Virus record (IMG/VR): IMGVR_UViG_3300029267_004162
Location: 62,001-126,000 of that record
Reading direction: 5' to 3' (one strand)
DNA: 64,000 nucleotides
Shown here in pieces: positions 35,709-45,658 of this stretch (position 1 is the stretch's first letter; every line of letters begins with the position of its first letter). The notes below the pieces were generated by a model. It made no database searches, had not been told where the DNA came from, and saw only the letters and a list, made by a program, of their open reading frames with translations. Position numbers and translations under genes: made by a program.

Positions 35709-36407
35709 TTAGCCATTAACCGACTCAATCAAGATATGTAGGTCATTGAGATCGGTGAATTCATGATCTGGCCTGTGGGTGCCAATATCATAAATGCGGT
35801 TGGCTCTATTTACCCACCCACTACAAATACCCGCCCGAATTGCGCCCCCTACGTCACTATATAGTGAATCACCAACATGAATGACGTGTTCACGTCGCCA
35901 GCCAGTAAATTCAAGTGCATCCTCGAAAATGCGTGGATTGGGCTTGTAAGAACGAGAGTCCTCGGATGTTACCACCCCAGTTACTTGAATATCATGCAGT
36001 GCCAACGCCTGATCCACATCGGCTCGGTCAGTATTTGATACTATGCAAATAGGCGTGCAAAAATTCGCCAGAAAAGACCTCACTTCTGGCTGCAACGGTG
36101 GATTCTTACAAGACACGACTAAGGTTTTGACGTATGGAACTGGATCAAGATCAACGATACCTATCGCTGCCATCGTTTCCCGTAACGTTTGCACCTCGAT
36201 CTCGAATAGCGTCAGGAAGTTGCCATCGTTATGATAGTCTACGGCCCTCAAAAACTTTTCACCCCAGGCAACACTAAGCTTGGATGGTGACAATTCGATG
36301 CCCGTATCTCTAATGATGGTGGCACATACCATCTCAACAGCGGCGCGATCACCAGCCGTGAGCGTCCCATACATATCCATGAATACGCCATCAAATCTCG
36401 TCATCAT
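35709..36407 (-). CDS. HAD-superfamily (subfamily IA) hydrolase
   Basis: DMYGTL, VSN, YKPNPRIF, HVGDSLYSDVGGA motifs. Confidence 0.9.
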   Translation of the reverse strand: MMTRFDGVFMDMYGTLTAGDRAAVEMVCATIIRDTGIELSPSKLSVAWGEKFLRAVDYHNDGNFLTLFEIEVQTLRETMAAIGIVDLDPVPYVKTLVVSCKNPPLQPEVRSFLANFCTPICIVSNTDRADVDQALALHDIQVTGVVTSEDSRSYKPNPRIFEDALEFTGWRREHVIHVGDSLYSDVGGAIRAGICSGWVNRANRIYDIGTHRPDHEFTDLNDLHILIESVNG

Positions 36408-36437: not shown

Positions 36438-36812
36438 TTATGGTCTGGATTCATCAATTGCCTTTTGTTCTACCACTTGCGGACCTTTGTTGACTAGACG
36501 AATGCAACACTTTTTAAATTTCTTTCCGCTACCACAGGGACACGGGCGATTACGCAAACAATTCTTAACCTGTCTTATCTCGGTTACATCTTTATTCTGA
36601 CAAGCCTTGTCATATGCTTTCTGTAAACGAGGCTTTAAAGCCCCCTCGTCTTCTTCCCCTATAAACTCTCTCGTTACCCTTTTGGCTTCTGTTATATTTC
36701 CGGCGACTTCACTTTCAGAGGTGGTACCGCCCGGACTGGTTCTGTCAACGCTGGTTTCTTCATGCATTTTTGTTGTTCCTTTATTCGTTGTTTTTCTGCT
36801 TGTTTTAACCAA
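36438..36812 (-). CDS. SEC-C motif protein (start uncertain; overlaps TGT 3' end)
   Basis: RNRPCPCGSGKKFKKCC. Confidence 0.75.
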   Translation of the reverse strand: MVKTSRKTTNKGTTKMHEETSVDRTSPGGTTSESEVAGNITEAKRVTREFIGEEDEGALKPRLQKAYDKACQNKDVTEIRQVKNCLRNRPCPCGSGKKFKKCCIRLVNKGPQVVEQKAIDESRP

Positions 36813-38560
36813 ATTTTCTTGGCTTTTTGCTGCAGAGTCTTCTGTACCTTGGCATTCCCTTTTCCTCTACCGGTTCGTCCCCTCTTTTTCTCCACTTCTC
36901 TTTTAGAGAATTTGTGTTTAGTGGATAATTTACCAGTTGCAGTGGCCCGCAAATCCTGGATGTATGCCAAATAGCCCTTGTTATTTTTAACCTCTTTCCA
37001 CCAATTTTGGACTAACGGAGGAAACTGACCTAAAACTGCCGGGTCATCCATATTCATATAGAGAGGCATCAATTCTAAATTACTTCCCTCCCTAACCCCC
37101 GTCATCACTGGGTCTCCATCTTCATCCATTAAGTCCCGATCTTCACTAAACACGATATCAGGTTTTAAACTAGACTTCTTTCGAGTTTCAGCGTAATACA
37201 AACTACGAAATTCCTGAAAACCCGCATCCACCCCATATTCGATGGTGTGTTCTACATAAGCCACTAATTTGGCTGAACTAGTCCCGAAAGTCTTTTTGAC
37301 CCATTGATAATAATCTTCATAATCACTTTTTTTGGCCGTCTCATGAAGTAAGTTAGTGAAATTATTTAATGCCCAGATGTTATGAATAGCTAAATACGGA
37401 CCAATTTTAGTATTCTCGCTCCAGAAGGGGTCCATAAATCCAAGAGAGGAACAAACAGGACAAGCACATGTGGTTGGCAACCGACCCATGTGAGCAAAAT
37501 CATTCAGCGGAACTCCGTGGTTGTTTTTCTTGGTTTTTCCGTCTAGATGAAATTCAGTTCCAATCCGATCCGTTGAAATATATCCAGAGGGGTGTTGGAT
37601 GAGTATTTTACGGTGACCTACCCCTAGAAACTGACTGCTGGAATCGCAAGTAACCCGAATTTCCATTCGTTTAGCGAACCACGCCATAGCAGGCATAATC
37701 TTGATTCCCGATACTCCCAGGACATGGACCCATTTGGCCTCTCTTTCTGTTGCTACCAAAAGGGCTCCTCTTAGGGCGGAAGCAAAATCTTGAGAATCCC
37801 CAGAACCTGCACTAGCCCACCCAAAGAATTGTGGGCGATCAACCACATCAATCCATCGCCTTTGATCATCTGGGGTACAACTATGCACGATGTTAAAGAC
37901 CTTTAGATCAGGTCTCATGTTAGCAGTGTAACAATCAGCGAATTGCGATTGTAAATGAGAGAGGGTAGAAAAAATATCTTTTTGTCCAAAATCAGTTCCC
38001 TCTCGGGGAGGCGCGTCCAAAATCAAAGCATAGTCAGAGGTTTGGTTTTGCCATTCAATAACTGCCTTCGGATCAAGATAATCAACTGTTCTAACTCGAA
38101 GTTGATACCCTCCGGAATCCGTCATATGCACCAGGCCTGATGTCTTAGCCCAGTTGGTTCTCTGGTTTTTTCTAATTCCATATGCAGCAGAACTAAGAAT
38201 GATCCCGACTTGCCTGTTAATAGATCCTTCTTCACAGAAAGGGTCTAATTCATGAACTACGTCAAAATCCCGTGGGTCAAACGGAGCCATGGAAGGGTAA
38301 GAAACAGAACTCCGACCAAAATTGTTTAAGAACACGGTGCGATCGGGAAGATCGTATATTTGAATTTGGTTGTTTAGTTTATGATAACCCACTCCGAACC
38401 GAGAAACATGATCTATTTGTTTCTTAAACCGTACTCCAATAGACGGGTGAAAGGAAACTTCCGCTCCAGCCATGATCCAAGTAAGTCCACCCGGATCGGC
38501 GTCAGTGCCAAAAGTCCCTAGGATTTCGTCTCGTCGAGAAGTCAAAATTACTGCCTGCAT
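36692..38560 (-). CDS. TGT/DpdA-like 7-deazaguanine transglycosylase
   Basis: HMTDSGGYQ, ILDAPP, WVHVLGVSG, VTCDSSS and zinc site CACPVC...HN; N- and C-terminal extensions. Confidence 0.85.
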   Translation of the reverse strand: MQAVILTSRRDEILGTFGTDADPGGLTWIMAGAEVSFHPSIGVRFKKQIDHVSRFGVGYHKLNNQIQIYDLPDRTVFLNNFGRSSVSYPSMAPFDPRDFDVVHELDPFCEEGSINRQVGIILSSAAYGIRKNQRTNWAKTSGLVHMTDSGGYQLRVRTVDYLDPKAVIEWQNQTSDYALILDAPPREGTDFGQKDIFSTLSHLQSQFADCYTANMRPDLKVFNIVHSCTPDDQRRWIDVVDRPQFFGWASAGSGDSQDFASALRGALLVATEREAKWVHVLGVSGIKIMPAMAWFAKRMEIRVTCDSSSQFLGVGHRKILIQHPSGYISTDRIGTEFHLDGKTKKNNHGVPLNDFAHMGRLPTTCACPVCSSLGFMDPFWSENTKIGPYLAIHNIWALNNFTNLLHETAKKSDYEDYYQWVKKTFGTSSAKLVAYVEHTIEYGVDAGFQEFRSLYYAETRKKSSLKPDIVFSEDRDLMDEDGDPVMTGVREGSNLELMPLYMNMDDPAVLGQFPPLVQNWWKEVKNNKGYLAYIQDLRATATGKLSTKHKFSKREVEKKRGRTGRGKGNAKVQKTLQQKAKKIWLKQAEKQRIKEQQKCMKKPALTEPVRAVPPLKVKSPEI

Positions 38561-38571
38561 TGGTTCTTGCT

Positions 38572-39189
38572 TCAGCGACCAGAGTTAACCAGATCAATTC
38601 TAGATGATCCGGCCAGAGCACCGGTCTCCACAAGCGTAAATTCCCGAGCGGCCCTCGGTATACAAAGATTGTGTGCCGCATTACCATCGCGATCCAAGAC
38701 CGCGTGGCAATTGGGGCACGTCCATTTCCTCATACATAACGATAAAGAATCAACTTTAAACCCACAGTGATGACAAATCTTACTGGAGGGGTAAAACCGA
38801 TCCCGAACTACGAGAGATGATCCAGAGGCTTCGCATTTGTAAATTAATTGCCTGCGGAATTCACTCCAAGAGGCATCACTGATATGGCGGGCTAGAGCGT
38901 GGTTTTTGATCATGCCGGCCACGTTTAGGTCCTCGATGCAAATCTCTTGGAACATGTTGGACAACTGAGTAATCAGTTTGTGCAGGAAGTCTTGGCGGTG
39001 ATTGGTGATTCGCCAGTGATGACGAGCCAGTGTCGCTGCTGATTTCCTTCTGTTGTTAGAACCTTTTTGTTTACGGCTATGACGGCGAGACAACTTACGA
39101 AGTTTAGTCAAACCCTTGCCTAAAGCTTTGATGGGTTTCTTCTTGATGAACCTCCGAAAAGATGGGGTCGGAAAGTCTCTCGTTTACAT
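38572..39189 (-). mobile_element. tnpB: Truncated TnpB (IS200/IS605/IS607 OrfB) remnant
   Basis: SRKQKGSNNRRK, ICIEDLNVAGM, FYPSSKICHHCG, WTCPNCHAVLDRDGNAA; RuvC-I and N-terminal domains missing; in-frame ATG-TAA at 39189-39184. Confidence 0.85.
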
Positions 39190-39222
39190 TTGAACCCTCC
39201 TCGGCTAATTCTGGCACCCCAT

Positions 39223-40485
39223 TTACGCAACCACGCCTTGGCACATTACTGATTTGATTGGATTCCAGTCAGCCCCAACATCCGTCAGGTAGTACACTCC
39301 CGCTCCTTCAATCTTTGTTGTACATTCATACAAATTTTTAACGGATTCAGGGATGTCCTGACCAAAAGCTGTTACAAGGCAAATATCTTCGGAGGCTTCG
39401 GATGCCAAGAAATGGCCGTTTTTTGTTATCCCGGCGGTATTGGAAATTGCCCATTTATTTGTATCTTGGGGTGGAGTGCTCACTAAATATTGTAAGGCTG
39501 GGATACCATTTTTGATCAAAACCGAAGCAAAATACTTCGAGCGAACCGGGAATTCCTTCATGCCCTCCCATAACCCAAAGAGCAATTCAGTATAACTAAA
39601 AGCGCAAGCCGCCACCTGGGCTTCAGTAGGATGTGGCATACGGGTAGTGTATTCTAAGAAATACATTTCCCCATCCGGAGTAACCATACAGTTGATATCG
39701 AAAAACCCTACGTGTCCTCTTATTTTGACCTCATGTGCTCGCATGAGATCGCCAATCGGAAAGGACAGTTGATCCAATTCCGTCCAGGTCATAAATTGAC
39801 CACAAGATCCTGATTCCCCAGTCATCTCAGTGGACCTGATCTGTTTAGGGTACCGTCGCTTGTATTCTTGAATCATGGTAAAAGGTTGTAGGAATTTGCC
39901 CTCTGCCCCCATGAACCCACCGAATCCAACTTCTTCACCTTCTATAAACTCTTGGTATACGGCACCCTGAAAATTAGTGGTCTTCAAAAACAAATCGCGT
40001 TTGTACAGCACCATTGTTCGGATAGAATTGCCCGGAAATCGTTGCTTAACCACATACTGATTTTCATCGAACTTAACCACTACTTTATCACCAGGAAACA
40101 TTTGTGCTTTATCTGGATCAGTAGTCGTCCGAGGAATTTTTATCCAGGGAGCCAACTTTTTGATAAACATAGCAGCAAACCCACGATCTAGTTCTAGTCT
40201 AGCACCAAGATCAACTGCTCGAATTTGCTGAGCTTCCCCCAGATTTGAAAAATGGTCTACGTAAAAAATCAAATCCGAAGGTCGGGAAATCTCTTTTACG
40301 CCCTCCCCCAACTGCCGCCAAGTCGAATACCACCGGATAGACATTCCAGGAGGTAAAACTTTTTCTTCGTCTGGGGGTTCGGGGGCCACTACATGAAAAA
40401 ACACCTCCACCGTGTCTTTAATCAAAGCAATAGCCAAAGCAAAGGGACACCAGTCCCCCACGAAATGAACTCTCCGAGTAGTCAT
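39223..40485 (-). CDS. PurD-like ATP-grasp amine ligase
   Basis: LELDRGFA, VVVKFD, QEFIEGEEVG, QEYKR, TGESG, GFFDINCM, YFLEYTTRMPHPT: divergent GAR-synthetase pattern. Confidence 0.8.
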   Translation of the reverse strand: MTTRRVHFVGDWCPFALAIALIKDTVEVFFHVVAPEPPDEEKVLPPGMSIRWYSTWRQLGEGVKEISRPSDLIFYVDHFSNLGEAQQIRAVDLGARLELDRGFAAMFIKKLAPWIKIPRTTTDPDKAQMFPGDKVVVKFDENQYVVKQRFPGNSIRTMVLYKRDLFLKTTNFQGAVYQEFIEGEEVGFGGFMGAEGKFLQPFTMIQEYKRRYPKQIRSTEMTGESGSCGQFMTWTELDQLSFPIGDLMRAHEVKIRGHVGFFDINCMVTPDGEMYFLEYTTRMPHPTEAQVAACAFSYTELLFGLWEGMKEFPVRSKYFASVLIKNGIPALQYLVSTPPQDTNKWAISNTAGITKNGHFLASEASEDICLVTAFGQDIPESVKNLYECTTKIEGAGVYYLTDVGADWNPIKSVMCQGVVA

Positions 40486-41216
40486 ACCAATTCCTTTGGT
40501 TTAACATCATACTCAGTTGAATCCTGGCCTTCAGCAGTCATAAAAGCCCAGTGCCTACCTCGACAAGCAAAACAACCACCACAATGATCTGATTTGCTAT
40601 TTTGAAAACAAGACACCGTCGTTTCCAATGGAGCCCCCAATGCTCTACCCAAACGAACAACTGCGGCTTTGTCTAGCCCAGCTAACGCATCGATCATTCC
40701 AAAATGGACTGCTGTTCCAGGGTGATTTTCGTGATAAGGTGTAAAATCGTTGTACAAAGAGCCGATTTCTCCACGGAATTCACTAGAATCCATAGTATCA
40801 AACACACCCCCAAGAAATTCATTCGTAAAATCTTTAGTGGCCGGGTCATTCATTCCAGAACCCCCAGTATCAGCATCCATCTCGCCAGTGTATACTTTTT
40901 CCACACCTATCTTTTCAGCCATCGCCAAAGCAAGGGAGTATTGAAATAACTTGAACCCAGGAATGTAATTACTTCCTGGAATTTGCAACTTGTCCAAAAC
41001 ATCCCGCATATCCACACGAGTCAATTTAAGACCAAGAAGACATGCAATTCTATTCTGCGATTCAACGACCTTTTCTTGTCCCCATAAATTCAGCGATAAC
41101 AATAGGGGGTAGGCCCCGGCTTTCTGGAGCATAGCAGCTACCACAGTGGAATCCAAACCGCCGCTAAAAAGTACCAGAGATTTGTAAACTTGCGTATGTG
41201 TATGCGTGTGGGTCAA
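40482..41216 (-). CDS. Divergent QueC paralogue (PP-loop ATPase)
   Basis: SGGLDS and SCF...HCGGCFAC retained; canonical VPxRN replaced by IPGFK and YPDCR absent. Confidence 0.8.
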   Translation of the reverse strand: MTHTHTHTQVYKSLVLFSGGLDSTVVAAMLQKAGAYPLLLSLNLWGQEKVVESQNRIACLLGLKLTRVDMRDVLDKLQIPGSNYIPGFKLFQYSLALAMAEKIGVEKVYTGEMDADTGGSGMNDPATKDFTNEFLGGVFDTMDSSEFRGEIGSLYNDFTPYHENHPGTAVHFGMIDALAGLDKAAVVRLGRALGAPLETTVSCFQNSKSDHCGGCFACRGRHWAFMTAEGQDSTEYDVKPKELV

Positions 41217-41932
41217 ACGAGAGCCTCCGGAGTATCTTTACTCTTCTTAACCATAGCGATGAAATGCAAACAGCATTCTATTTGATTACGGGGAAACCCC
41301 AAGTGTTCAACACAATACCGAATTACTTGATCGGAATCTAAAGATTTAGTGTGCGTCCCAGCGCGACCCATGATGGTAAGTTTACCTCCACGAGTACCAG
41401 CCACCAACTGCTCCATGGATTCCTTCACAAGTCTCCTGGTGAAAATAAACCGGGAAGTGATGTGTTCTTGGGTTAGACAATAGGCCAGTTGTTTTCCATA
41501 CACTTCAGCATCAAAAGAATCGGCGTGAAATTTGTACAGGGTTTGGGGTGTAGTCGCAACACCCTGACGAATAACAGCACCATTGCATAGGGAAGCCCTC
41601 CCCGGAATAGAATAATCTTGTTCGACGCCCCAAAGATCAAAAGCAAGGAACATAAAAGAGGGGTCGATAATCCAGCGGTGGTCCACCAGCAAAATTGAGT
41701 GGGTCAATTGCCCCTTCACTTCCACAACTACTAGTTGGCCTTGTCCCAACAGTTGTTGTGCCTGTCGGGCTAAGTGAAAGCAGTTTCCTGATTTGGCCCC
41801 GTAGGCCAAATCTTTTTGAGGATAATCCGGGGTGCCTCTTCCCTTGGCAAGAGCCGTGATCTTAGAGATGGTCTCAAATAACCAGGTTTGAGGATTCAGT
41901 TTTTCTACGGCCTGTTGCAAAAAAGAAGTCAT
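41213..41932 (-). CDS. Arylamine N-acetyltransferase / transglutaminase-like Cys-His-Asp protein
   Basis: SGNCFHL...THSILLVD...WIIDPSF triad spacing like the NAT family. Confidence 0.6.
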   Translation of the reverse strand: MTSFLQQAVEKLNPQTWLFETISKITALAKGRGTPDYPQKDLAYGAKSGNCFHLARQAQQLLGQGQLVVVEVKGQLTHSILLVDHRWIIDPSFMFLAFDLWGVEQDYSIPGRASLCNGAVIRQGVATTPQTLYKFHADSFDAEVYGKQLAYCLTQEHITSRFIFTRRLVKESMEQLVAGTRGGKLTIMGRAGTHTKSLDSDQVIRYCVEHLGFPRNQIECCLHFIAMVKKSKDTPEALV

Positions 41933-41936
41933 GGTA

Positions 41937-42398
41937 TCACCTCAAATGAGGTTCGAGGGTGGGGAAAGTACCAAATCTATCTGATGCCCATTGTGCCCAC
42001 TCCTCACTGTGTCTCTGTGCGAATGGTTGGATGGCTATGCCCCCACGAGAATTAAAACACCCAATTACTTCAACATACTTGGGGGTCAACAAACTCATCA
42101 AATCTTCGACTATGACGTTGACAACTGCTTCGTGGAAAGCTCCATGATTTCTAAAACTGCCCAGGTAAAGCTTCAGAGCTTTGCTCTCGACTAAACGCTC
42201 CTGAGGAACATAATTGATGTAGATCGTACCCCAATCAGGTTGACTGGTGACGGGACAAATACTGGAGAATTCTGAACAGATCAAGCGAATCCAAAATACC
42301 GACTCCCGTGATGGGCTGGGTACATGTTCTAGAAGTTCAGGATTGTACTGTTGAGTCTGGGAACCAAATCCGGAATTACCTGAGCCTAAATGATTCAT
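41937..42398 (-). CDS. queF: NADPH-dependent preQ0 reductase (type I QueF)
   Basis: EFSSICPVTSQPD, QueF motif ESKALKLY, FHE, FNSRGGI. Confidence 0.93.
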   Translation of the reverse strand: MNHLGSGNSGFGSQTQQYNPELLEHVPSPSRESVFWIRLICSEFSSICPVTSQPDWGTIYINYVPQERLVESKALKLYLGSFRNHGAFHEAVVNVIVEDLMSLLTPKYVEVIGCFNSRGGIAIQPFAQRHSEEWAQWASDRFGTFPTLEPHLR

Positions 42399-42717
42399 TA
42401 TCTTCTGCCAACCTTTCCACTAAACTAGCGACTCGTTTGCAAATCCATTGAATATCATGATCAGTTAACTGCGATGGATCAGCTCGACCCAGTAAAAGCA
42501 GTTTTTGAAGTCGCTGCCATATAGCTTTATGAACAGCGGACTCAACGTGTTCTGAAAGCAGACGGATACTACCGGCTTCCCCCGGAACCATGTCATTACA
42601 GGTGAATAGGCAGTCCTTGTACAGACACCCGTAGTATTCACCACGTGGATTCCATGCGAAATGATCCCGGTTACAAATTGGACAACTAACAGCGGTCATT
42701 TCAGTCCTGATTGACAA
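42376..42717 (-). CDS. Small zinc-ribbon protein
   Basis: CPIC...YYGCLYKDC. Confidence 0.55.
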   Translation of the reverse strand: MSIRTEMTAVSCPICNRDHFAWNPRGEYYGCLYKDCLFTCNDMVPGEAGSIRLLSEHVESAVHKAIWQRLQKLLLLGRADPSQLTDHDIQWICKRVASLVERLAEDNESFRLR

Positions 42718-42750: not shown

Positions 42751-43539
42751 CTAACGATTAGGACACAAAATCAGACCACTGCGAATCTCCAGTTCTTCCA
42801 GCGTAACAGTGTAGTTCTGAAAGTTGGCCTTGCGAGGTGTATCCTGGGGCAAAAGATAAGCTGTCGGAGTTTCCCCTCTGATCATCACGATTTTCCAAAA
42901 AGCGGAGGGAACACAGTGGGGTTCATCTGCTCCAGGTAATTGAGGCATGCTATCGTCTTCGAATAGTGGGCCGGTGAGAATCCAGGTTTCCCCATGTTCC
43001 CATGTCAGTTCTCGCACGTAGATTTCCAATCCTAGCCAAGTTCCCTGATTGAGACCAGGATACTGAGGTGCGATGTTGCTCAGATAGTTTACTTGAGAAG
43101 CATCTTTGGACCCCCGGAAAGAAGCCAATGGAGCTAGGTGACCCCGATCAAAATCACTGGCTCCCTTGTAGTCGGCTGGTTCCAAAGTTTCAGCCGGATC
43201 CAATAGAGGATCACTTCTCCACACCCGAGCTAAATCCAGTGTTCCTCTTGTTTTACTGGGGGTTAAGTGATAAGCCACCCAGTCTGCTAGCTTGGTTTCG
43301 ATGTTAGCACTAAGGGCGTAAGATTCACGCACAACAATGACATTGGTTTCGGGGGTGCCGATTGGACAACCAAAAAGGAAATGTTCACATCGAATCTGAC
43401 CGGTGGGGAAGGGGATGGGAGCAACAGCCATTAAAGGCTTGGGGGTAGAAACGGTGAGCGTCAAGAATGCCCGGATGAGGATGATGAGACAAATCGAGCA
43501 CACAATCCACGTACAAGTCCGACGGGGTTTAGTCGACAT
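42751..43539 (-). CDS. DNA/RNA non-specific endonuclease (NucA/EndA family) with N-terminal membrane anchor
   Basis: ADWVAY, FDRGHLAP, NYLSNIAPQ..LNQGTW..LE, VPSAFWK; start moved to MSTKPRR. Confidence 0.9.
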   Translation of the reverse strand: MSTKPRRTCTWIVCSICLIILIRAFLTLTVSTPKPLMAVAPIPFPTGQIRCEHFLFGCPIGTPETNVIVVRESYALSANIETKLADWVAYHLTPSKTRGTLDLARVWRSDPLLDPAETLEPADYKGASDFDRGHLAPLASFRGSKDASQVNYLSNIAPQYPGLNQGTWLGLEIYVRELTWEHGETWILTGPLFEDDSMPQLPGADEPHCVPSAFWKIVMIRGETPTAYLLPQDTPRKANFQNYTVTLEELEIRSGLILCPNR

Positions 43540-44068
43540 GAAGTTTCTCCCAACCGGTTTCTGGATAGTACACGCGATTGCCATCAAAAATGTAAATTAG
43601 CATATAGTCGTCCCCCAAGTTGCTATTGGTGAAACATCTGTGTCCGCCTTCATAAATCAACAGGTAATTCCCACCGCCAATCCACATCCAGCTATCAGTC
43701 ACGAAATTCCACAGATACAGTTCTTTGCTAAACCACGTGTAATAGCTGTATTTCTTGCATTTTTTATAACCCGGCGGTATTACATATACTGAATCATCCC
43801 TGGTCACTTCTAAAACTGGAGTCGTTTCTATCTTTTGACACTTCCTCATTTTCAGACACTGTTTACAGGTAACGCGCTGCCAATGGGGGCTGGTACGACT
43901 CTCACTTGCCCAAAACTCCAACCCACATACCGCAAAATCATACGAGCCATAATTAACTACCCTCCCGCCTTGATATCCTCGGTCTCTACGTTTCCGCTTA
44001 TGTATAATCTTTCGCTTCTCTAAAGGCTGCGGGCTACTTACCGTCATCTCATTTCCTAACCGGGCCAT
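43529..44068 (-). CDS. Hypothetical protein
   Basis: ORF track; VTCKQC. Confidence 0.5.
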   Translation of the reverse strand: MARLGNEMTVSSPQPLEKRKIIHKRKRRDRGYQGGRVVNYGSYDFAVCGLEFWASESRTSPHWQRVTCKQCLKMRKCQKIETTPVLEVTRDDSVYVIPPGYKKCKKYSYYTWFSKELYLWNFVTDSWMWIGGGNYLLIYEGGHRCFTNSNLGDDYMLIYIFDGNRVYYPETGWEKLHVD

Positions 44069-44717
44069 AGACGGTAGGATCGGTTACCTCGGCTAACCGA
44101 AATGCCTCTCGTCGTTCCACACAGGTTCCACATTTACCGCAATGAGTGACTTGTCCTTTGTAGCATGACCATGTCTCCCCGAAGGGCACGTGTAATTCAT
44201 GACCGAGACGGCATATCCTGGTTTTATCATACCGAAGAAAGGGAGTCCAAATAGGTACCGGATAATAATGACACACATCAGCGATCTGAGACAAGGCTAT
44301 CACAAAGGCTGGTCTACAGTCTGGGTAGATGGAGTGATCCCCAGCGTGAGCAGCATAAGCCACGGCGTCATATTTCTCATTGATGCAACACCCAATAGCG
44401 ATCGATAACATGATCATATTACGATTGGGAACTACCGTGGTCTGCATATTCTTGTCAGCATAATGCCCCTCCGGCACCACCGTTGCTGAATCCATCAAAG
44501 CGTTATCGCCCAAGAGTTGACCCACGGAACGTAAGTCTAAGATATGATGGGGACACTTATACTCGATTGCCAAAGCGGCTGCGGCTTCGATCTCCCGTCG
44601 TCCGTGTTTCTGACCGTAATTGAAGGTCAAACACTGACAAGTATGGCCTTGTGCCAATAAACTGGCCAGAAGTACAGTAGAATCCATCCCACCGGATAGG
44701 GATACAATCACTTTCAC
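44049..44717 (-). CDS. queC: 7-cyano-7-deazaguanine (preQ0) synthase
   Basis: SGGMDS, YGQKH, VVPNRN, YPDCR, TWSCY...HCGKCGTC; GTG start at 44717 with GGAGG SD. Confidence 0.95.
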   Translation of the reverse strand: MKVIVSLSGGMDSTVLLASLLAQGHTCQCLTFNYGQKHGRREIEAAAALAIEYKCPHHILDLRSVGQLLGDNALMDSATVVPEGHYADKNMQTTVVPNRNMIMLSIAIGCCINEKYDAVAYAAHAGDHSIYPDCRPAFVIALSQIADVCHYYPVPIWTPFLRYDKTRICRLGHELHVPFGETWSCYKGQVTHCGKCGTCVERREAFRLAEVTDPTVYGPVRK

Positions 44718-45658
44718 TGGGGTGCCTCCGCCAACATCGGAATTTCCGAGGACACGGCTCGAAGAATATCGCGTTTGTATTCCCCTGCCACATCGGGAGT
44801 CCCCAGGGACAAAGATTTGCACTGCTTTTCATAAGCGGTTTGCATCAGAAACAGGATCATCAACGTTATGGGATCAAACTTCTTAAATCCAGGTAGGGAC
44901 CATACTTCTACCAGACGTAGTTGGTCCGTCTCCTGGAAATATAAGATCAACCCCAGTGGTTTGCCCTCGAATTCGAGTACCAGAGCCTCTGCGTGAATTC
45001 CGGCCAGAATCAAATAGTCCCAACGTGATTTGTTGGTCGTCGCCCATTTGGTAAGAGGGGTCTCTTTTAGAGGCGAAGTAAGATGTTGCAATTCCCCAAA
45101 CCAAAAATCTGGGGTCTTTGGCTGACTTACCACCTTGGGGCTAAACTTTCGCCAGGTCGTTCGAGTATAACGACAATCAGTACCTTTCAAGTGGCTCTCA
45201 AAATCAGAAGCGGCAAGAGGTAAAATCAATTCTGTCTGAGTCGGAATCCCCTCCCCATACAGCAGCTTGATCAGAGATTCAAAATCGGGGCCACTTAAAG
45301 CCAGGAGGTTTCTAGTCAAGCCGAGGTTGTTCAAAGGAAAGACTAGCAGTGGAGTGTAGCCATCATCCTTCATCTCTGATACACGAACAATGCCACTCTG
45401 CTCCCGTTTAGCAATTAGATGAAGGATACCGGGTGGAACATCCAAATTAATAGGGTTTAGGCCCTGAATTCCCCTCATTAAAACATCAGACCATTCTTGG
45501 TGGTGTTCAACCAAAAAACACCGGCCATCACGTTCTACTCGTGTACCTAGCTGGGGACGAGGGGGTTTATCCCGTTTAACAACCAATCGTTTAGATCGTG
45601 TTTTCTTCTTAACGGCTGGTTTTGATGGTAATGACGACGACGTCATGTTATCTCTCAA
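44714..45658 (-). CDS. GNAT/Fem-like acyltransferase-domain protein
   Basis: C-terminal LVLEFEGKPLGLILY...LMILFLMQTAYEKQCKSLSLG...EYKR; GTGA-coupled to queC. Confidence 0.55.
   Translation of the reverse strand: MRDNMTSSSLPSKPAVKKKTRSKRLVVKRDKPPRPQLGTRVERDGRCFLVEHHQEWSDVLMRGIQGLNPINLDVPPGILHLIAKREQSGIVRVSEMKDDGYTPLLVFPLNNLGLTRNLLALSGPDFESLIKLLYGEGIPTQTELILPLAASDFESHLKGTDCRYTRTTWRKFSPKVVSQPKTPDFWFGELQHLTSPLKETPLTKWATTNKSRWDYLILAGIHAEALVLEFEGKPLGLILYFQETDQLRLVEVWSLPGFKKFDPITLMILFLMQTAYEKQCKSLSLGTPDVAGEYKRDILRAVSSEIPMLAEAPQ

What the first reader, a model, noticed from the sequence alone, without database searches (positions are those of the whole stretch)
40482..41216. Second QueC with remodelled substrate motifs
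Seen: PP-loop and zinc ligands intact, but VPxRN is IPGFK, YGQxH is LWGQE and YPDCR is replaced by an acidic insertion, while a canonical queC sits 3 kb away. Established: QueC paralogues act in archaeosine synthesis (Gat-QueC) and in defence systems (QatC, type IV CBASS), where they can attach deazaguanine to protein amines. Inference: it adenylates a carboxylate and transfers it to an acceptor other than ammonia, either a base or a protein.
Basis: partly seen in the sequence, partly recalled or inferred. Interest (0 to 1): 0.7.

Follow-up and report, generated by a model that had tools for sequence, protein, structure and literature searches.

The report
Phage-only QueC paralogue, remodelled pocket
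A 262-kb marine or sediment phage carries, beside a normal queC, a second QueC-like enzyme that keeps its ATP and zinc sites but has lost the residues QueC needs to make preQ0; it belongs to a small, undescribed, phage-only branch of the family that sits among 7-deazaguanine and amide-bond-forming genes, so it probably helps build a new DNA base modification.

Summary
Window 40482-41216 (-) encodes a 244-aa QueC-fold protein. The SGGLDS PP-loop and the C-x8-C-x2-C-x2-C zinc site are intact. The other motifs are changed: YxQxHxxE reads WGQEKVVE, VPxRN reads IPGFK, YPDC is unrecognisable, and an acidic insert of about 25 aa precedes it. A canonical queC lies 2.8 kb upstream.

It is not decaying. 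It belongs to a supported clade (SH-aLRT 97) of 32 representatives among 1.84 billion proteins. Every context examined is phage-like, and no cultured phage has a member. The clade keeps the ATP and Zn residues, but the invariant Arg of VPxRN is always an aromatic residue.

In 6 of the 15 distinct contexts examined, clade members lie beside a QueC-type paralogue. They also recur with queD/queE/folE, a TGT/DpdA-like gene, PurD-like ATP-grasp ligases, FemAB-like transferases and AdoMet decarboxylases.

Here the gene is translationally coupled in queF–orf239–queC-L–purD-like, next to the genome's only TGT/DpdA-like gene.

Best reading (about 0.45): an adenylate-forming amide ligase in a 7-deazaguanine DNA hypermodification pathway. 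Neither the substrate nor the acceptor amine is shown. It fails the membership tests for QueC, QatC, Cap9 and Gat-QueC. I rate it a new variant of a known kind.

The parts
40482..41216 (-). QueC-L: 244-aa QueC-fold PP-loop ATPase with a remodelled substrate pocket (the finding)
   Evidence: Searches give the family scores and motifs. The AF2 model has pLDDT 87. Foldseek ranks QueC 2pg3/3bl5 first, then Cap9, then QatC.
41224..41228 (-). Shine-Dalgarno GGAGG, 7 nt before the TTG start (41216-41214). The start overlaps the upstream TGA (41215-41213).
   Evidence: Read directly from the sequence.
39223..40485 (-). PurD-like (GARS N/A/C) ATP-grasp carboxylate-amine ligase. Its ATG overlaps the QueC-L stop (ATGA).
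   Evidence: TIGR00877 E 1e-9. PDB PurD 2yw2 E 3e-5. ESM Atlas structure TM 0.73-0.80 to PurD over about 380 residues, with viral PurD-like clusters. Overlap seen.
41213..41932 (-). 239-aa orphan ORF, possibly an arylamine-N-acetyltransferase/transglutaminase-like Cys-His-Asp enzyme (low confidence)
   Evidence: No homologue among 5.8 billion proteins and no Pfam hit at E<=10. The ESM Atlas model (pLDDT 0.55) matches PF00797 clusters at TM 0.61-0.64. The C51/H78/D90 pattern is read from the sequence. The AF2 single-sequence model was unusable.
41937..42398 (-). Unimodular QueF (preQ0 to preQ1 reductase)
   Evidence: TIGR03139 139 bits against a cut-off of 86.9; PF14489 E 1.5e-32. The CPVTSQPD and ESKALKLY motifs are read.
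44049..44822 (-). Canonical QueC (YGQKH, VPNRN, YPDCR all present)
   Evidence: TIGR00364 183 bits against a cut-off of 150. Alignments.
36692..38560 (-). TGT-superfamily protein, the only one in the genome, and the candidate DNA transglycosylase (DpdA-like)
   Evidence: Its family profile hits archaeosine TGT 1iq8 at E 6.6e-10. DSGGFQ and CxCxxC...H are invariant. It is the only PF01702-like locus in the genome. The homologue in Achromobacter phage Motura lies between QueC/AsnB-like and QueE/FolE genes.
38572..39111 (-). Truncated IS605-type TnpB lying between the ATP-grasp and TGT-like genes. It is an insertion remnant, not part of the pathway.
   Evidence: phrog_506 E 4e-58, covering profile positions 214-360 of 403.
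35709..36407 (-). HAD-family phosphatase (YjjG/nucleotidase-like). The same family recurs near QueC-L in locus L015.
   Evidence: PF00702 E 4.7e-16. NCBIfam hits. L015 context.

Best explanation
QueC-L is an active, zinc-containing, ATP-dependent adenylate-forming enzyme. It belongs to a previously undescribed, phage-restricted clade of the QueC family.

It probably no longer makes preQ0. I propose that it adenylates a carboxylate on a 7-deazaguanine, and an amine other than ammonia then captures the acyl-adenylate to form an amide. The carboxylate would most simply be 7-carboxy-7-deazaguanine (CDG), or a carboxyl-bearing side chain built on preQ1.

In this phage it would work with three neighbours. 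QueF supplies the aminomethyl base preQ1. The PurD-like ATP-grasp ligase forms a second amide bond. The 239-aa ORF is possibly an acyl transferase. Together they would build an amide-linked side chain on the deazaguanine, which the TGT/DpdA-like enzyme then puts into phage DNA.

Shown: the fold, the intact ATP and Zn sites, loss of QueC-specific residues, clade-wide conservation, gene coupling and the recurrent neighbourhood.

Inferred: that it is catalytically active, that its substrate is a deazaguanine carboxylate, that the acceptor is not ammonia, and that the product ends up in DNA.
For: 1. Fold and cofactor sites. The AF2 model has pLDDT 87. The nearest solved folds are QueC 2pg3/3bl5 (E about 5e-9), then Cap9 9nto and QatC 9y01. 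The PP-loop and all four Cys are kept in nearly every clade member, alongside R221 in 31 of 32 and K183 in 28 of 32.

2. Probably not a preQ0 synthase. Arg of VPxRN is aromatic in 32 of 32 clade members against Arg in 29 of 29 canonical sequences. The Tyr of YPDC is lost. The Tyr after the first Zn Cys is Phe. The equivalent E. coli residues R99, Y131 and Y189 are each essential (PMC13329287). TIGR00364 scores 53 bits against a cut-off of 150.

3. Probably still a deazaguanine binder. In Cap9 the base stacks on the RN Arg and the YxDC Tyr and hydrogen-bonds the Asp (preprint 10.1101/2025.04.06.647259). The clade keeps an aromatic residue at the Arg position. It keeps an acid at or beside the Asp position: E in 18 of 23 inner members, D in 8 of 9 outer members, and M142-D143 here.

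4. Under selection as a family. It is a distinct clade of 32 representatives (SH-aLRT 97), with an inner-clade-specific Glu in TGE in 22 of 23 members.

5. Context in this phage. The genes queF, orf239, queC-L and purD-like are joined by 4-nt overlaps or a 4-nt gap and have their own SD sites. Canonical queC is 2.8 kb away and the only TGT-like gene 1.9 kb away. folE, queD and queE lie elsewhere in the genome.

6. Context elsewhere.
- QueC-type paralogue beside it in L015, L103, L106, L112 and L113.
- queD, queE and folE in L112; queE in L106.
- TGT-like gene and folE in G001.
- PurD-like ATP-grasp in L015 and L113.
- FemAB/ATE-like transferases in L007, L011 and L112.
- AdoMet decarboxylase, with or without spermidine synthase, in L007, L011 and L103.

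7. Precedents for the chemistry. Cap9 and QatC adenylate CDG and pass it to an amine. Phage CmoY, another PP-loop enzyme, ligates a DNA-base carboxylate to glycine (PMC12783734).
Against: - There is no biochemical evidence.
- No clade member is in a cultured phage, so no DNA chemistry is known for any host genome.
- The neighbours differ between loci. No single partner is universal. L012 and L111 show no deazaguanine gene within 8-10 kb on either side.
- The PurD-like and HAD genes belong to large viral families that are common in big phages. Their proximity may be incidental.
- The window protein has Met at the clade's conserved Glu/Asp position.
- The predicted heterodimer with QueC would also fit a role inside preQ0 synthesis.
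- The protein is acidic (pI 5.45), so action on DNA rather than on a free base is not favoured. This does not argue against the ligase idea itself.
Confidence: 0.45

Rival explanations
1. QueC-L still works inside preQ0/ADG synthesis with ammonia as the acceptor. It could be a specialised half-reaction enzyme (CDG to ADG only, like the proposed phage 'QueC*', or ADG to preQ0). Or it could be the second subunit of a QueC/QueC-L heterodimer.
For: - It lies beside a QueC-type paralogue in 6 of the 15 distinct contexts examined.
- In L103, L106, L112 and L113 neither adjacent paralogue is fully canonical. The pair might share the work.
- Complex prediction for QueC-L with the window's QueC scored 0.63, against a best of 0.37 among 3 controls. 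That mark was reached by 58 of 80 solved complexes and 2 of 110 mismatched pairs; the counts hold only roughly because my own alignments were used. The runs agree in at least 84% of contacts and the partner's pLDDT is at least 72.
- The phage 'QueC*' is a proposed ADG synthase (PMC10516641).
Against: - This phage already has a canonical QueC that passes the equivalog cut-off.
- The residues needed for E. coli QueC activity are replaced.
- The predicted interface uses the same helices in both chains (85-102 and 142-163 against 131-148 and 166-185). It therefore looks like a symmetric paralogue dimer. From memory, solved QueC is a homodimer; if so, the pass may be memory of that and cannot separate heterodimer from homodimer.
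- No Campylobacter phage appeared among the best tblastn hits. No QueC* sequence was tested directly.
Confidence: 0.2
2. QueC-L attaches 7-carboxy-7-deazaguanine to the N-terminal amine of a protein, as Cap9 and QatC do. The phage might use this for regulation or counter-defence, with the TGT-like protein acting as a Cap10-like reader.
For: - phmmer against PDB sequences aligns it to QatC 9vlk over residues 13-238 in one stretch (E 1.2e-5), on a par with QueC 3bl5.
- PADLOC QatC scores 42 bits, above the Cap9-type QueC model at 27.7 bits.
- A QueC-like gene paired with a TGT-like gene echoes Cap9/Cap10.
- QatC also lost YxQxH, VPxRN and YPDC yet still uses CDG.
Against: - NF041925 QatC scores 39.7 bits against a cut-off of 280.
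- It has no QatC N- or C-terminal extensions (244 aa against about 400-465).
- No qatA/B/D or CD-NTase gene is nearby.
- No neighbouring ORF begins Met-Gly, unlike the N-terminal-glycine acceptors CdnD and QatB.
- The phage carries the full preQ1 pathway and this is its only TGT-like gene. That fits DNA modification better.
Confidence: 0.08
3. QueC-L adenylates a substrate unrelated to 7-deazaguanine, such as another nucleobase, nucleotide or cofactor carboxylate or carbonyl. Other PP-loop enzymes do this (GMP synthase, TilS, NAD synthetase, LarE). Its position near the que genes would then only reflect a general nucleotide-metabolism module.
For: - L007/L011, L012, L016 and L111 put clade members among replication genes, with no que gene within the few kilobases visible.
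- The inner clade has lost the Tyr of YPDC and gained an insert and an invariant Glu.
- The PF06508 superfamily is known to have diversified to other substrates.
Against: - 7 of the 11 loci with at least 4 kb of context show deazaguanine-pathway genes.
- The outer clade keeps [FY]xD at the YPDC position.
- The closest folds are QueC and Cap9, not GMPS, TilS or LarE.
Confidence: 0.15
4. QueC-L is a decaying duplicate with no function.
For: The canonical motifs are lost while a canonical copy remains nearby.
Against: - The frame is open, the SD site is strong, and the gene is translationally coupled.
- The ATP and Zn residues are almost invariant in a clade whose members share only about 30% identity.
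- The model is confident.
- The sequence is identical in the contigs of four metagenome runs. Those runs may not be independent.
Confidence: 0.03

Closest known systems
Canonical QueC (7-cyano-7-deazaguanine synthase, PF06508 cluster 1, TIGR00364)
   Same: Same fold, same SGGxDS PP-loop and same C-x8-C-x2-C-x2-C zinc site. It is the closest structural match (2pg3, 3bl5). The genomic setting is the same pathway.
   Different: - The Arg of VPxRN is Phe.
- The Tyr of YPDC is lost.
- YxQxH reads WxQxK.
- The Tyr after the first zinc Cys is Phe.
- There is an insert of about 25 aa and an inner-clade-specific invariant Glu (TGE).
- It scores below the equivalog cut-off and forms a separate clade on the tree.
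Cap9 (type IV CBASS) and QatC (QatABCD): QueC-family protein deazaguanylases
   Same: Both are QueC-fold enzymes that adenylate CDG and give it to an amine other than ammonia. QatC likewise lost the canonical substrate motifs but kept the PP-loop and zinc site.
   Different: - No defence-system partners are present.
- It lacks QatC's extensions and Cap9's retained Y/FxQ, RN and YxDC motifs.
- It scores far below the QatC cut-off.
- It is encoded by a phage inside a DNA-modification cluster.
- No candidate protein acceptor is evident.
CmoY of Synechococcus phage S-B43 (asparagine-synthetase-like amide ligase)
   Same: Functional analogy only. It is a phage PP-loop-type adenylating enzyme that turns a carboxyl 'handle' on a DNA base into an amide with glycine.
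   Different: It belongs to a different family (AsnB-like), acts on a different base (5-carboxymethylcytosine) and works on DNA. QueC-L shows only a trace Asn_synthase match at the P-loop (E 0.007).
Gat-QueC (archaeosine/dG+ synthesis, phage 9g)
   Same: It is a QueC-family paralogue used by phages to go beyond preQ0.
   Different: Gat-QueC has an N-terminal class-II glutaminase domain, and its QueC domain falls within canonical QueC on the tree. QueC-L has a single domain and lies in another clade.
Phage preQ1-modifying enzymes DpdM and DpdN (methyl- and formyl-dPreQ1)
   Same: They share the pathway logic: QueF makes preQ1, whose amine is then decorated, and a DpdA inserts the base into DNA.
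   Different: The folds and chemistry are unrelated (methyl or formyl transfer). No PF06508 or ATP-grasp enzyme has been implicated there.

Membership tests
Canonical QueC (preQ0 synthase) | SGGxDS PP-loop | tested here: met
   S18-G-G-L-D-S23.
Canonical QueC (preQ0 synthase) | C-x8-C-x2-C-x2-C zinc site | tested here: met
   C203, C212, C215 and C218.
Canonical QueC (preQ0 synthase) | VPxRN with the essential Arg (E. coli R99) | tested here: not met
   It reads IPGFK. The Arg column is R in 29 of 29 canonical sequences and aromatic in 32 of 32 clade members.
Canonical QueC (preQ0 synthase) | YxQxHxxE (E. coli Y35 essential) | tested here: not met
   It reads W45-G-Q-E-K-V-V-E52. Gln and Glu are kept; Tyr is Trp and His is Lys.
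Canonical QueC (preQ0 synthase) | YPDC (E. coli Y131 essential) | tested here: not met
   The place reads DTMD or SSEF, depending on the aligner. There is no aromatic residue at the Tyr column.
Canonical QueC (preQ0 synthase) | Score above the TIGR00364 equivalog cut-off | tested here: not met
   53.1 bits against 150.3. The neighbouring queC scores 183.2.
Canonical QueC (preQ0 synthase) | Restores queuosine in a queC mutant | not testable with these tools
   This needs a complementation assay.
QatC (QatABCD) | Score above the NF041925 cut-off; N- and C-terminal extensions (about 400 aa or more) | tested here: not met
   39.7 bits against 280. PADLOC QatC 42 bits, mainly over the P-loop region (best stretch residues 6-63). 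The protein is 244 aa.
QatC (QatABCD) | Operon with qatA, qatB and qatD | tested here: not met
   None of the ten ORFs in 35.7-45.7 kb scanned against Pfam hit the QatA ATPase (PF07693) or TatD DNase (PF01026) family. The five cluster proteins scanned against PADLOC gave only QueC/QatC-type matches.
Cap9 (type IV CBASS) | Minimal QueC of about 185 aa that retains Y/FxQ, RN and YxDC | tested here: not met
   RN and YxDC are absent. The PADLOC Cap9-type QueC model scores 27.7 bits, against 105.8 for the window's canonical QueC.
Cap9 (type IV CBASS) | Adjacent CD-NTase and Cap10 | tested here: not met
   No CD-NTase was found among the cluster ORFs scanned. The TGT-like neighbour was not tested against Cap10.
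Gat-QueC | N-terminal class-II glutamine amidotransferase domain fused to QueC | tested here: not met
   The protein has a single domain. The phage 9g Gat-QueC C-domain groups with canonical QueC, away from QueC-L.
QueC-L clade (defined in this report) | P-G-[YFHW]-[RK] in place of P-x-R-N, with the PP-loop and zinc site kept | tested here: met
   It reads IPGFK. Gly and the aromatic residue are present in 32 of 32 members, and Arg or Lys follows in 24 of 32. The clade has SH-aLRT 97.
QueC-L clade (defined in this report) | Inner clade: invariant Glu in (Y)TGE after beta4, and an insert before the YPDC position | tested here: met
   Y109-T-G-E112, with Glu in 22 of 23 inner members. The insert is residues ~113-137.
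DpdA-dependent 7-deazaguanine DNA modification system (context) | The genome encodes FolE, QueD, QueE and QueC (with or without QueF) plus a TGT-family transglycosylase | tested here: met
   Whether the TGT-like protein acts on DNA is not testable here.

The most novel reading that the evidence does not exclude
QueC-L defines a phage-only enzyme family that uses the carboxyl group of 7-carboxy-7-deazaguanine as a handle. The base may be free or already in DNA. The family would ligate the carboxylate to amino acids or polyamines, giving a whole new class of N-substituted 7-amido-7-deazaguanine DNA hypermodifications. The side chain would vary with the accessory genes: PurD-like ligase and a possible acyltransferase here, and FemAB-like transferases or AdoMet decarboxylase with spermidine synthase in relatives.
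Probability: 0.3. Interest if true: 0.8.

Novelty: new variant of a known kind. Interest (0 to 1): 0.62.

Why it matters
Eight 7-deazaguanine derivatives are known in phage DNA. All carry small groups at C7: nitrile, amide, amidine, carboxyl, H, and aminomethyl with or without methyl or formyl.

A conserved, phage-only QueC branch that sits among amide-ligase, aminoacyl-transferase and polyamine genes points to larger, amide-linked side chains that have not been seen. Such bases would affect restriction, CRISPR and glycosylase-based defences. They would add enzymes for site-specific DNA derivatisation.

It would also give a third independent case, after QatC and Cap9, of the QueC scaffold being turned from nitrile synthesis to amide ligation, this time on the virus side of the arms race.

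The 2026 survey of PF06508 (PMC13329287) analyses seven major clusters in detail and sets three small archaeal ones aside. The motif sets it gives do not match this clade.

Tried and rejected
- **AF2 of the 239-aa ORF** without an alignment gave pLDDT 36 and was not used. The NAT-like reading rests only on an ESM Atlas match and a sequence pattern, so it is a lead.
- **The 314-aa ORF (44714-45658)** has a weak Acetyltransf_6 hit (E 0.03). It is not related to the FemAB-like neighbours of other clade members by hhalign (probability 0.07%). Dropped.
- **The 643-aa ORF in L112** is not demonstrably TGT-like (hhalign probability 1.4%).
- **QatC and Cap9 were not placed on the tree**, because no sequences of them were obtainable through the tools. 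HMM cut-offs, PDB sequence matches and fold ranks were used instead.
- **No neighbour protein is shared** between this window and other clade loci at BLAST or phmmer level, except QueC-L itself and the TGT-like gene of G001. The resemblance of the PurD-like and HAD genes to those of L015 is at family level only.
- **No clade member occurs in 50,697 isolate phage records.** The best hits are canonical QueC at 30% identity or less, and Vibrio phage VH7D QueC was checked and is canonical.
- **Read laying** showed identical contigs in four DNA runs, with no variants and no RNA run. It gave no test of selection or expression. The 90% cluster's second member differs only in how the start codon is written.
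- **Complex prediction** passed for QueC-L with QueC, but through the paralogous dimer surface. I do not treat it as evidence of a specific heterodimer.
Full report
**Setting.** The window is bases 62001-126000 of a 262,650-bp IMG/VR virus record that CheckV rates complete. All genes in the region lie on the minus strand. The same sequence is present, letter for letter over 39200-42400, in the contigs of four sediment and seawater metagenome runs. Those runs may not be independent, and no RNA run holds it.

**The observation.** ORF 40482-41216 (-) encodes 244 aa.
- Its TTG start overlaps the TGA of the upstream ORF, and GGAGG lies 7 nt before it. Its stop overlaps the ATG of the next gene (ATGA).
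- It matches Pfam QueC at 77 bits, but the QueC equivalog model at only 53 bits against a cut-off of 150. The queC at 44049-44822 scores 183 bits.
- Profile-profile alignment to canonical phage QueCs is unambiguous (hhalign probability 99.95%).
- Intact: SGGLDS (18-23) and the four zinc cysteines (203, 212, 215, 218).
- Changed: YGQxHxxE reads WGQEKVVE, VPxRN reads IPGFK, and the Tyr after the first zinc Cys is Phe.
- An acidic segment of about 25 residues (113-137, pI 4.05) is inserted before the YPDC position. That position reads DTMD or SSEF depending on the aligner.
- The E. coli equivalents Y35, R99, Y131 and Y189 each abolish QueC function when changed to Ala (PMC13329287).

**Fold.** With a 15-sequence family alignment, AF2 gives pLDDT 87 and pTM 0.87. 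Foldseek against the PDB ranks QueC first (2pg3 and 3bl5, E about 5e-9, TM 0.65-0.67 by query). Cap9 follows (9nto_B, 3e-7). GMP synthase, ThiI and TtuA come next, with QatC (9y01_B) at 1.4e-5.

**A clade, not a one-off.**
- A word-indexed search of 5.8 billion proteins found only the protein itself, plus hits at about 30% identity or less.
- The exhaustive HMMER search of 1.84 billion representatives found about 15 full-length relatives at 29-40% identity over the matched stretches.
- On a tree of 111 QueC-family sequences, these and 16 further representatives form a clade of 32 (SH-aLRT 97). The other 79 rows hold canonical bacterial and phage QueC, the phage 9g Gat-QueC C-domain and two other divergent phage subfamilies. 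This was a quick search, and QatC and Cap9 are not on the tree.
- The window protein falls in an inner clade of 23 (support 91).

Column counts:

| Position | Canonical (29) | Clade |
|---|---|---|
| PP-loop and four Cys | kept | kept in nearly all |
| Arg of VPxRN | R 29/29 | Y/F/H/W 32/32 |
| Residue before that Arg | variable | Gly 32/32 |
| Asn of VPxRN | N 29/29 | mostly Arg/Lys |
| Tyr of YPDC | Y 29/29 | lost in inner clade; F or Y in 4 of 9 outer |
| Asp of YPDC | D 29/29 | Glu in 18/23 inner, Asp in 8/9 outer; M142-D143 here |
| Glu in (Y)TGE | absent | 22/23 inner clade only |

Conservation of the catalytic scaffold at about 30% identity argues against neutral decay.

None of the 50,697 isolate phage records holds a clade member. 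The best hits are ordinary QueCs at 30% identity or less, and the VH7D QueC, checked directly, is canonical.

**What the pocket changes suggest.** In the Cap9-CdnD structure the conjugated deazaguanine stacks between the RN Arg and the YxDC Tyr and hydrogen-bonds the Asp (preprint 10.1101/2025.04.06.647259). The clade keeps a stacking-capable aromatic residue at the Arg position and an acid at or next to the Asp position. It remodels the other face with the insert. This fits a substrate that is still guanine-like, held differently, with room for a larger second substrate. That is an inference, not a result.

**Local context.**
- The order on the coding strand is: queC (canonical), a 179-aa ORF, an Endonuclease_NS nuclease and a 113-aa ORF. 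Next come queF (unimodular, 139 bits against 86.9), orf239, queC-L and a PurD-like ATP-grasp. A truncated TnpB, a 622-aa TGT-superfamily protein, a SEC-C-motif ORF and a HAD phosphatase follow.
- The four genes from queF to the purD-like gene are separated by a 4-nt gap or by 4-nt overlaps.
- The ATP-grasp protein resembles PurD along its whole length (TIGR00877 E 1e-9; PDB 2yw2 E 3e-5; Atlas TM 0.73-0.80 over about 380 residues). It belongs to large, mostly viral PurD-like clusters.
- orf239 has no homologue anywhere. A low-confidence ESM Atlas model matches arylamine N-acetyltransferases at TM 0.61-0.64. The sequence has a Cys51...His78...Asp90 pattern. AF2 failed on it, so this stays a lead.
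- The 622-aa protein is the genome's only TGT-like gene. A profile of it and five jumbo-phage homologues hits archaeosine TGT 1iq8 at E 6.6e-10, with invariant DSGGFQ and CxCxxC...H. The Achromobacter phage Motura homologue lies between QueC/AsnB-like and QueE/FolE genes.
- folE, queD and queE lie elsewhere in the genome.

The phage thus has everything needed to make preQ1 and a candidate enzyme to place it in DNA.

**Context in relatives.** All contexts examined are phage-like.
- A second QueC-family gene lies directly beside the clade member in L103, L106, L112 and L113, and 2.4 kb away in L015. These partners are themselves non-canonical. One type is a 318-373-aa 'QueC-X' with a YG[CAG]G[IV]DST loop that keeps PxRN. 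The other is a shorter type of 192-213 aa.
- L112 adds queD, queE and folE in the same 10 kb. L106 has a QueE-like radical SAM gene.
- G001, a distantly related jumbo-phage fragment, has the TGT-like gene 9 kb from its QueC-L, and also folE.
- PurD-like ATP-grasp genes recur in L015 (with a HAD gene) and L113.
- FemAB/Arg-tRNA-transferase-like GNAT genes recur in L007, L011 and L112.
- AdoMet decarboxylase recurs in L007, L011 and L103, and L103 also has a spermidine synthase.
- L012 and L111 show no such genes within 8-10 kb on either side.

No single partner is universal. The repeated theme is deazaguanine synthesis together with enzymes that make amide bonds or supply amines.

**Mechanism proposed.** QueC-L adenylates a carboxylate on a deazaguanine and an amine other than ammonia takes the acyl group. 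The carboxylate would be CDG, or a carboxyl on a side chain attached to preQ1. Two sets of precedents exist:
- Cap9 and QatC do this with CDG and a protein N-terminus.
- Phage CmoY, an AsnB-type PP-loop enzyme, ligates the carboxyl of 5-carboxymethylcytosine in DNA to glycine (PMC12783734).

In this phage the PurD-like ligase could acylate the preQ1 amine, by analogy with glycine plus phosphoribosylamine, or could extend a carboxylate. orf239 could cap or transfer an acyl group. These step assignments are speculative.

The protein's pI (5.45) is like that of canonical QueCs (median 5.6). It gives no hint of DNA binding, so a free-base substrate is slightly favoured.

**Rivals.**
1. *A role inside preQ0/ADG synthesis, possibly as a heterodimer with QueC.* The complex test scored 0.63, against a best of 0.37 among 3 controls. 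That mark was reached by 58 of 80 solved complexes and 2 of 110 mismatched pairs; the counts hold only roughly because my own alignments were used. The runs agree in at least 84% of contacts and the partner's pLDDT is at least 72. The interface uses equivalent helices of both paralogues. It therefore looks like a symmetric paralogue dimer and may be recalled from solved QueC homodimers (their oligomeric state is from my memory). It cannot separate heterodimer from homodimer.
2. *Protein deazaguanylation.* There is no positive evidence, and the defining partners and cut-offs are not met.
3. *An unrelated substrate.* This is possible for the inner clade, but the recurrent que context counts against it.
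4. *Decay.* This is disfavoured.

**Comparison with the literature.** The 2026 PF06508 survey covers these clusters: canonical QueC, QatC, LarE, a PfkB-associated group, WbpG-like, GMPS, Cap9 and three small archaeal groups, which it sets aside without detailed analysis. None of the motif sets it gives matches P-G-aromatic-R/K with TGE. The 2023 catalogue of phage deazaguanines lists QueC, QueC*, Gat-QueC, ArcS2, QueF and DpdL/M/N, but no ATP-grasp or second QueC of this kind. Full-text searches found no paper linking preQ1 or DpdA to an ATP-grasp or hypermodifying ligase.

**Verdict.** The feature is real, conserved and under constraint. It is a member of the QueC superfamily but not of QueC proper, QatC, Cap9 or Gat-QueC. 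It is best described as a new, phage-restricted QueC variant, and probably an amide ligase of a deazaguanine hypermodification pathway. Its substrate and acceptor are unknown.

Noticed in passing
window 38572-39111 (-) and 39200-39238: A truncated IS605-type TnpB lies inside the deazaguanine cluster, between the ATP-grasp and TGT-like genes. The 39 bp at 39200-39238 recur on another contig of the same phage in all four runs. Relative L012 has a full-length TnpB at the equivalent place.
   Followed up: partly
L103:9294-10298, L106:6790-7746, L015:4515-5636: These form a second divergent phage QueC subfamily, 'QueC-X' (318-373 aa). It has an N-terminal extension and a YG[CAG]G[IV]DST loop in place of SGGxDS, and it keeps PxRN. 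All three lie beside or near a QueC-L gene. It is not clear which of the pair, if either, makes preQ0.
   Followed up: partly
L112:10618-11196 and L113:6679-7320: A shorter QueC-type partner (192-213 aa, with GGGLDS, DYGQ/DYGH and GRN) lies directly beside outer-clade QueC-L genes. In L112 it is followed by queD, queE and, about 5 kb further on, folE.
   Followed up: partly
L108:3977-7281 (Achromobacter phage Motura): The Motura QueC belongs to yet another subfamily by motif (NPFPDA instead of YPDC, shared with P0002, P0004, P0005, P0007, P0012 and P0015). On the tree, however, it sits apart from those six, on a long branch. It lies next to an AsnB-like amide ligase and the TGT/DpdA-like gene. 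This is another uncharacterised deazaguanine variant in a cultured jumbo phage.
   Followed up: no
window 42751-43587 (-): A DNA/RNA non-specific endonuclease (PF01223, E 9e-40) with a hydrophobic N-terminal segment sits between queC and queF. It may degrade unmodified host DNA.
   Followed up: no
window 36438-36812 (-) against 36692-38560 (-): A 124-aa ORF with a SEC-C zinc motif overlaps, by 121 nt, the Lys-rich C-terminal tail of the TGT-like ORF. One of the two gene boundaries is probably miscalled.
   Followed up: no
window 44714-44822: The longest queC ORF (GTG at 44822) overlaps the 314-aa upstream ORF by 109 nt. It also gives a 36-aa leader before the PP-loop region. The true queC start is probably further downstream.
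   Followed up: no
L103:2899-4556: A phage contig carries two AdoMet decarboxylase genes flanking a spermidine synthase gene, near a UDG-fused family-A DNA polymerase and the QueC-L/QueC-X pair. This hints at polyamine-derived DNA or base chemistry.
   Followed up: no
window 39223-40485 (-): The PurD-like ATP-grasp belongs to large, mostly viral clusters in the ESM Atlas, one of which is tagged PF26092 (T4_Y16D). A widespread phage PurD-like family of unknown function therefore exists beyond this cluster.
   Followed up: partly
window 41190-41216 (-): QueC-L begins MTHTHTHTQ, a (Thr-His)3 repeat ahead of the PP-loop strand. It is absent from all relatives. It may be a metal-binding tail or only a short repeat.
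   Followed up: no
L105:1266-2141 and L016:10764-11705: A 291-313-aa protein with no family match lies immediately downstream of QueC-L in two otherwise different phage contigs (a jackhmmer search started from the L105 ORF finds the L016 ORF at E 3e-67). It is a candidate dedicated partner in that sub-branch.
   Followed up: partly
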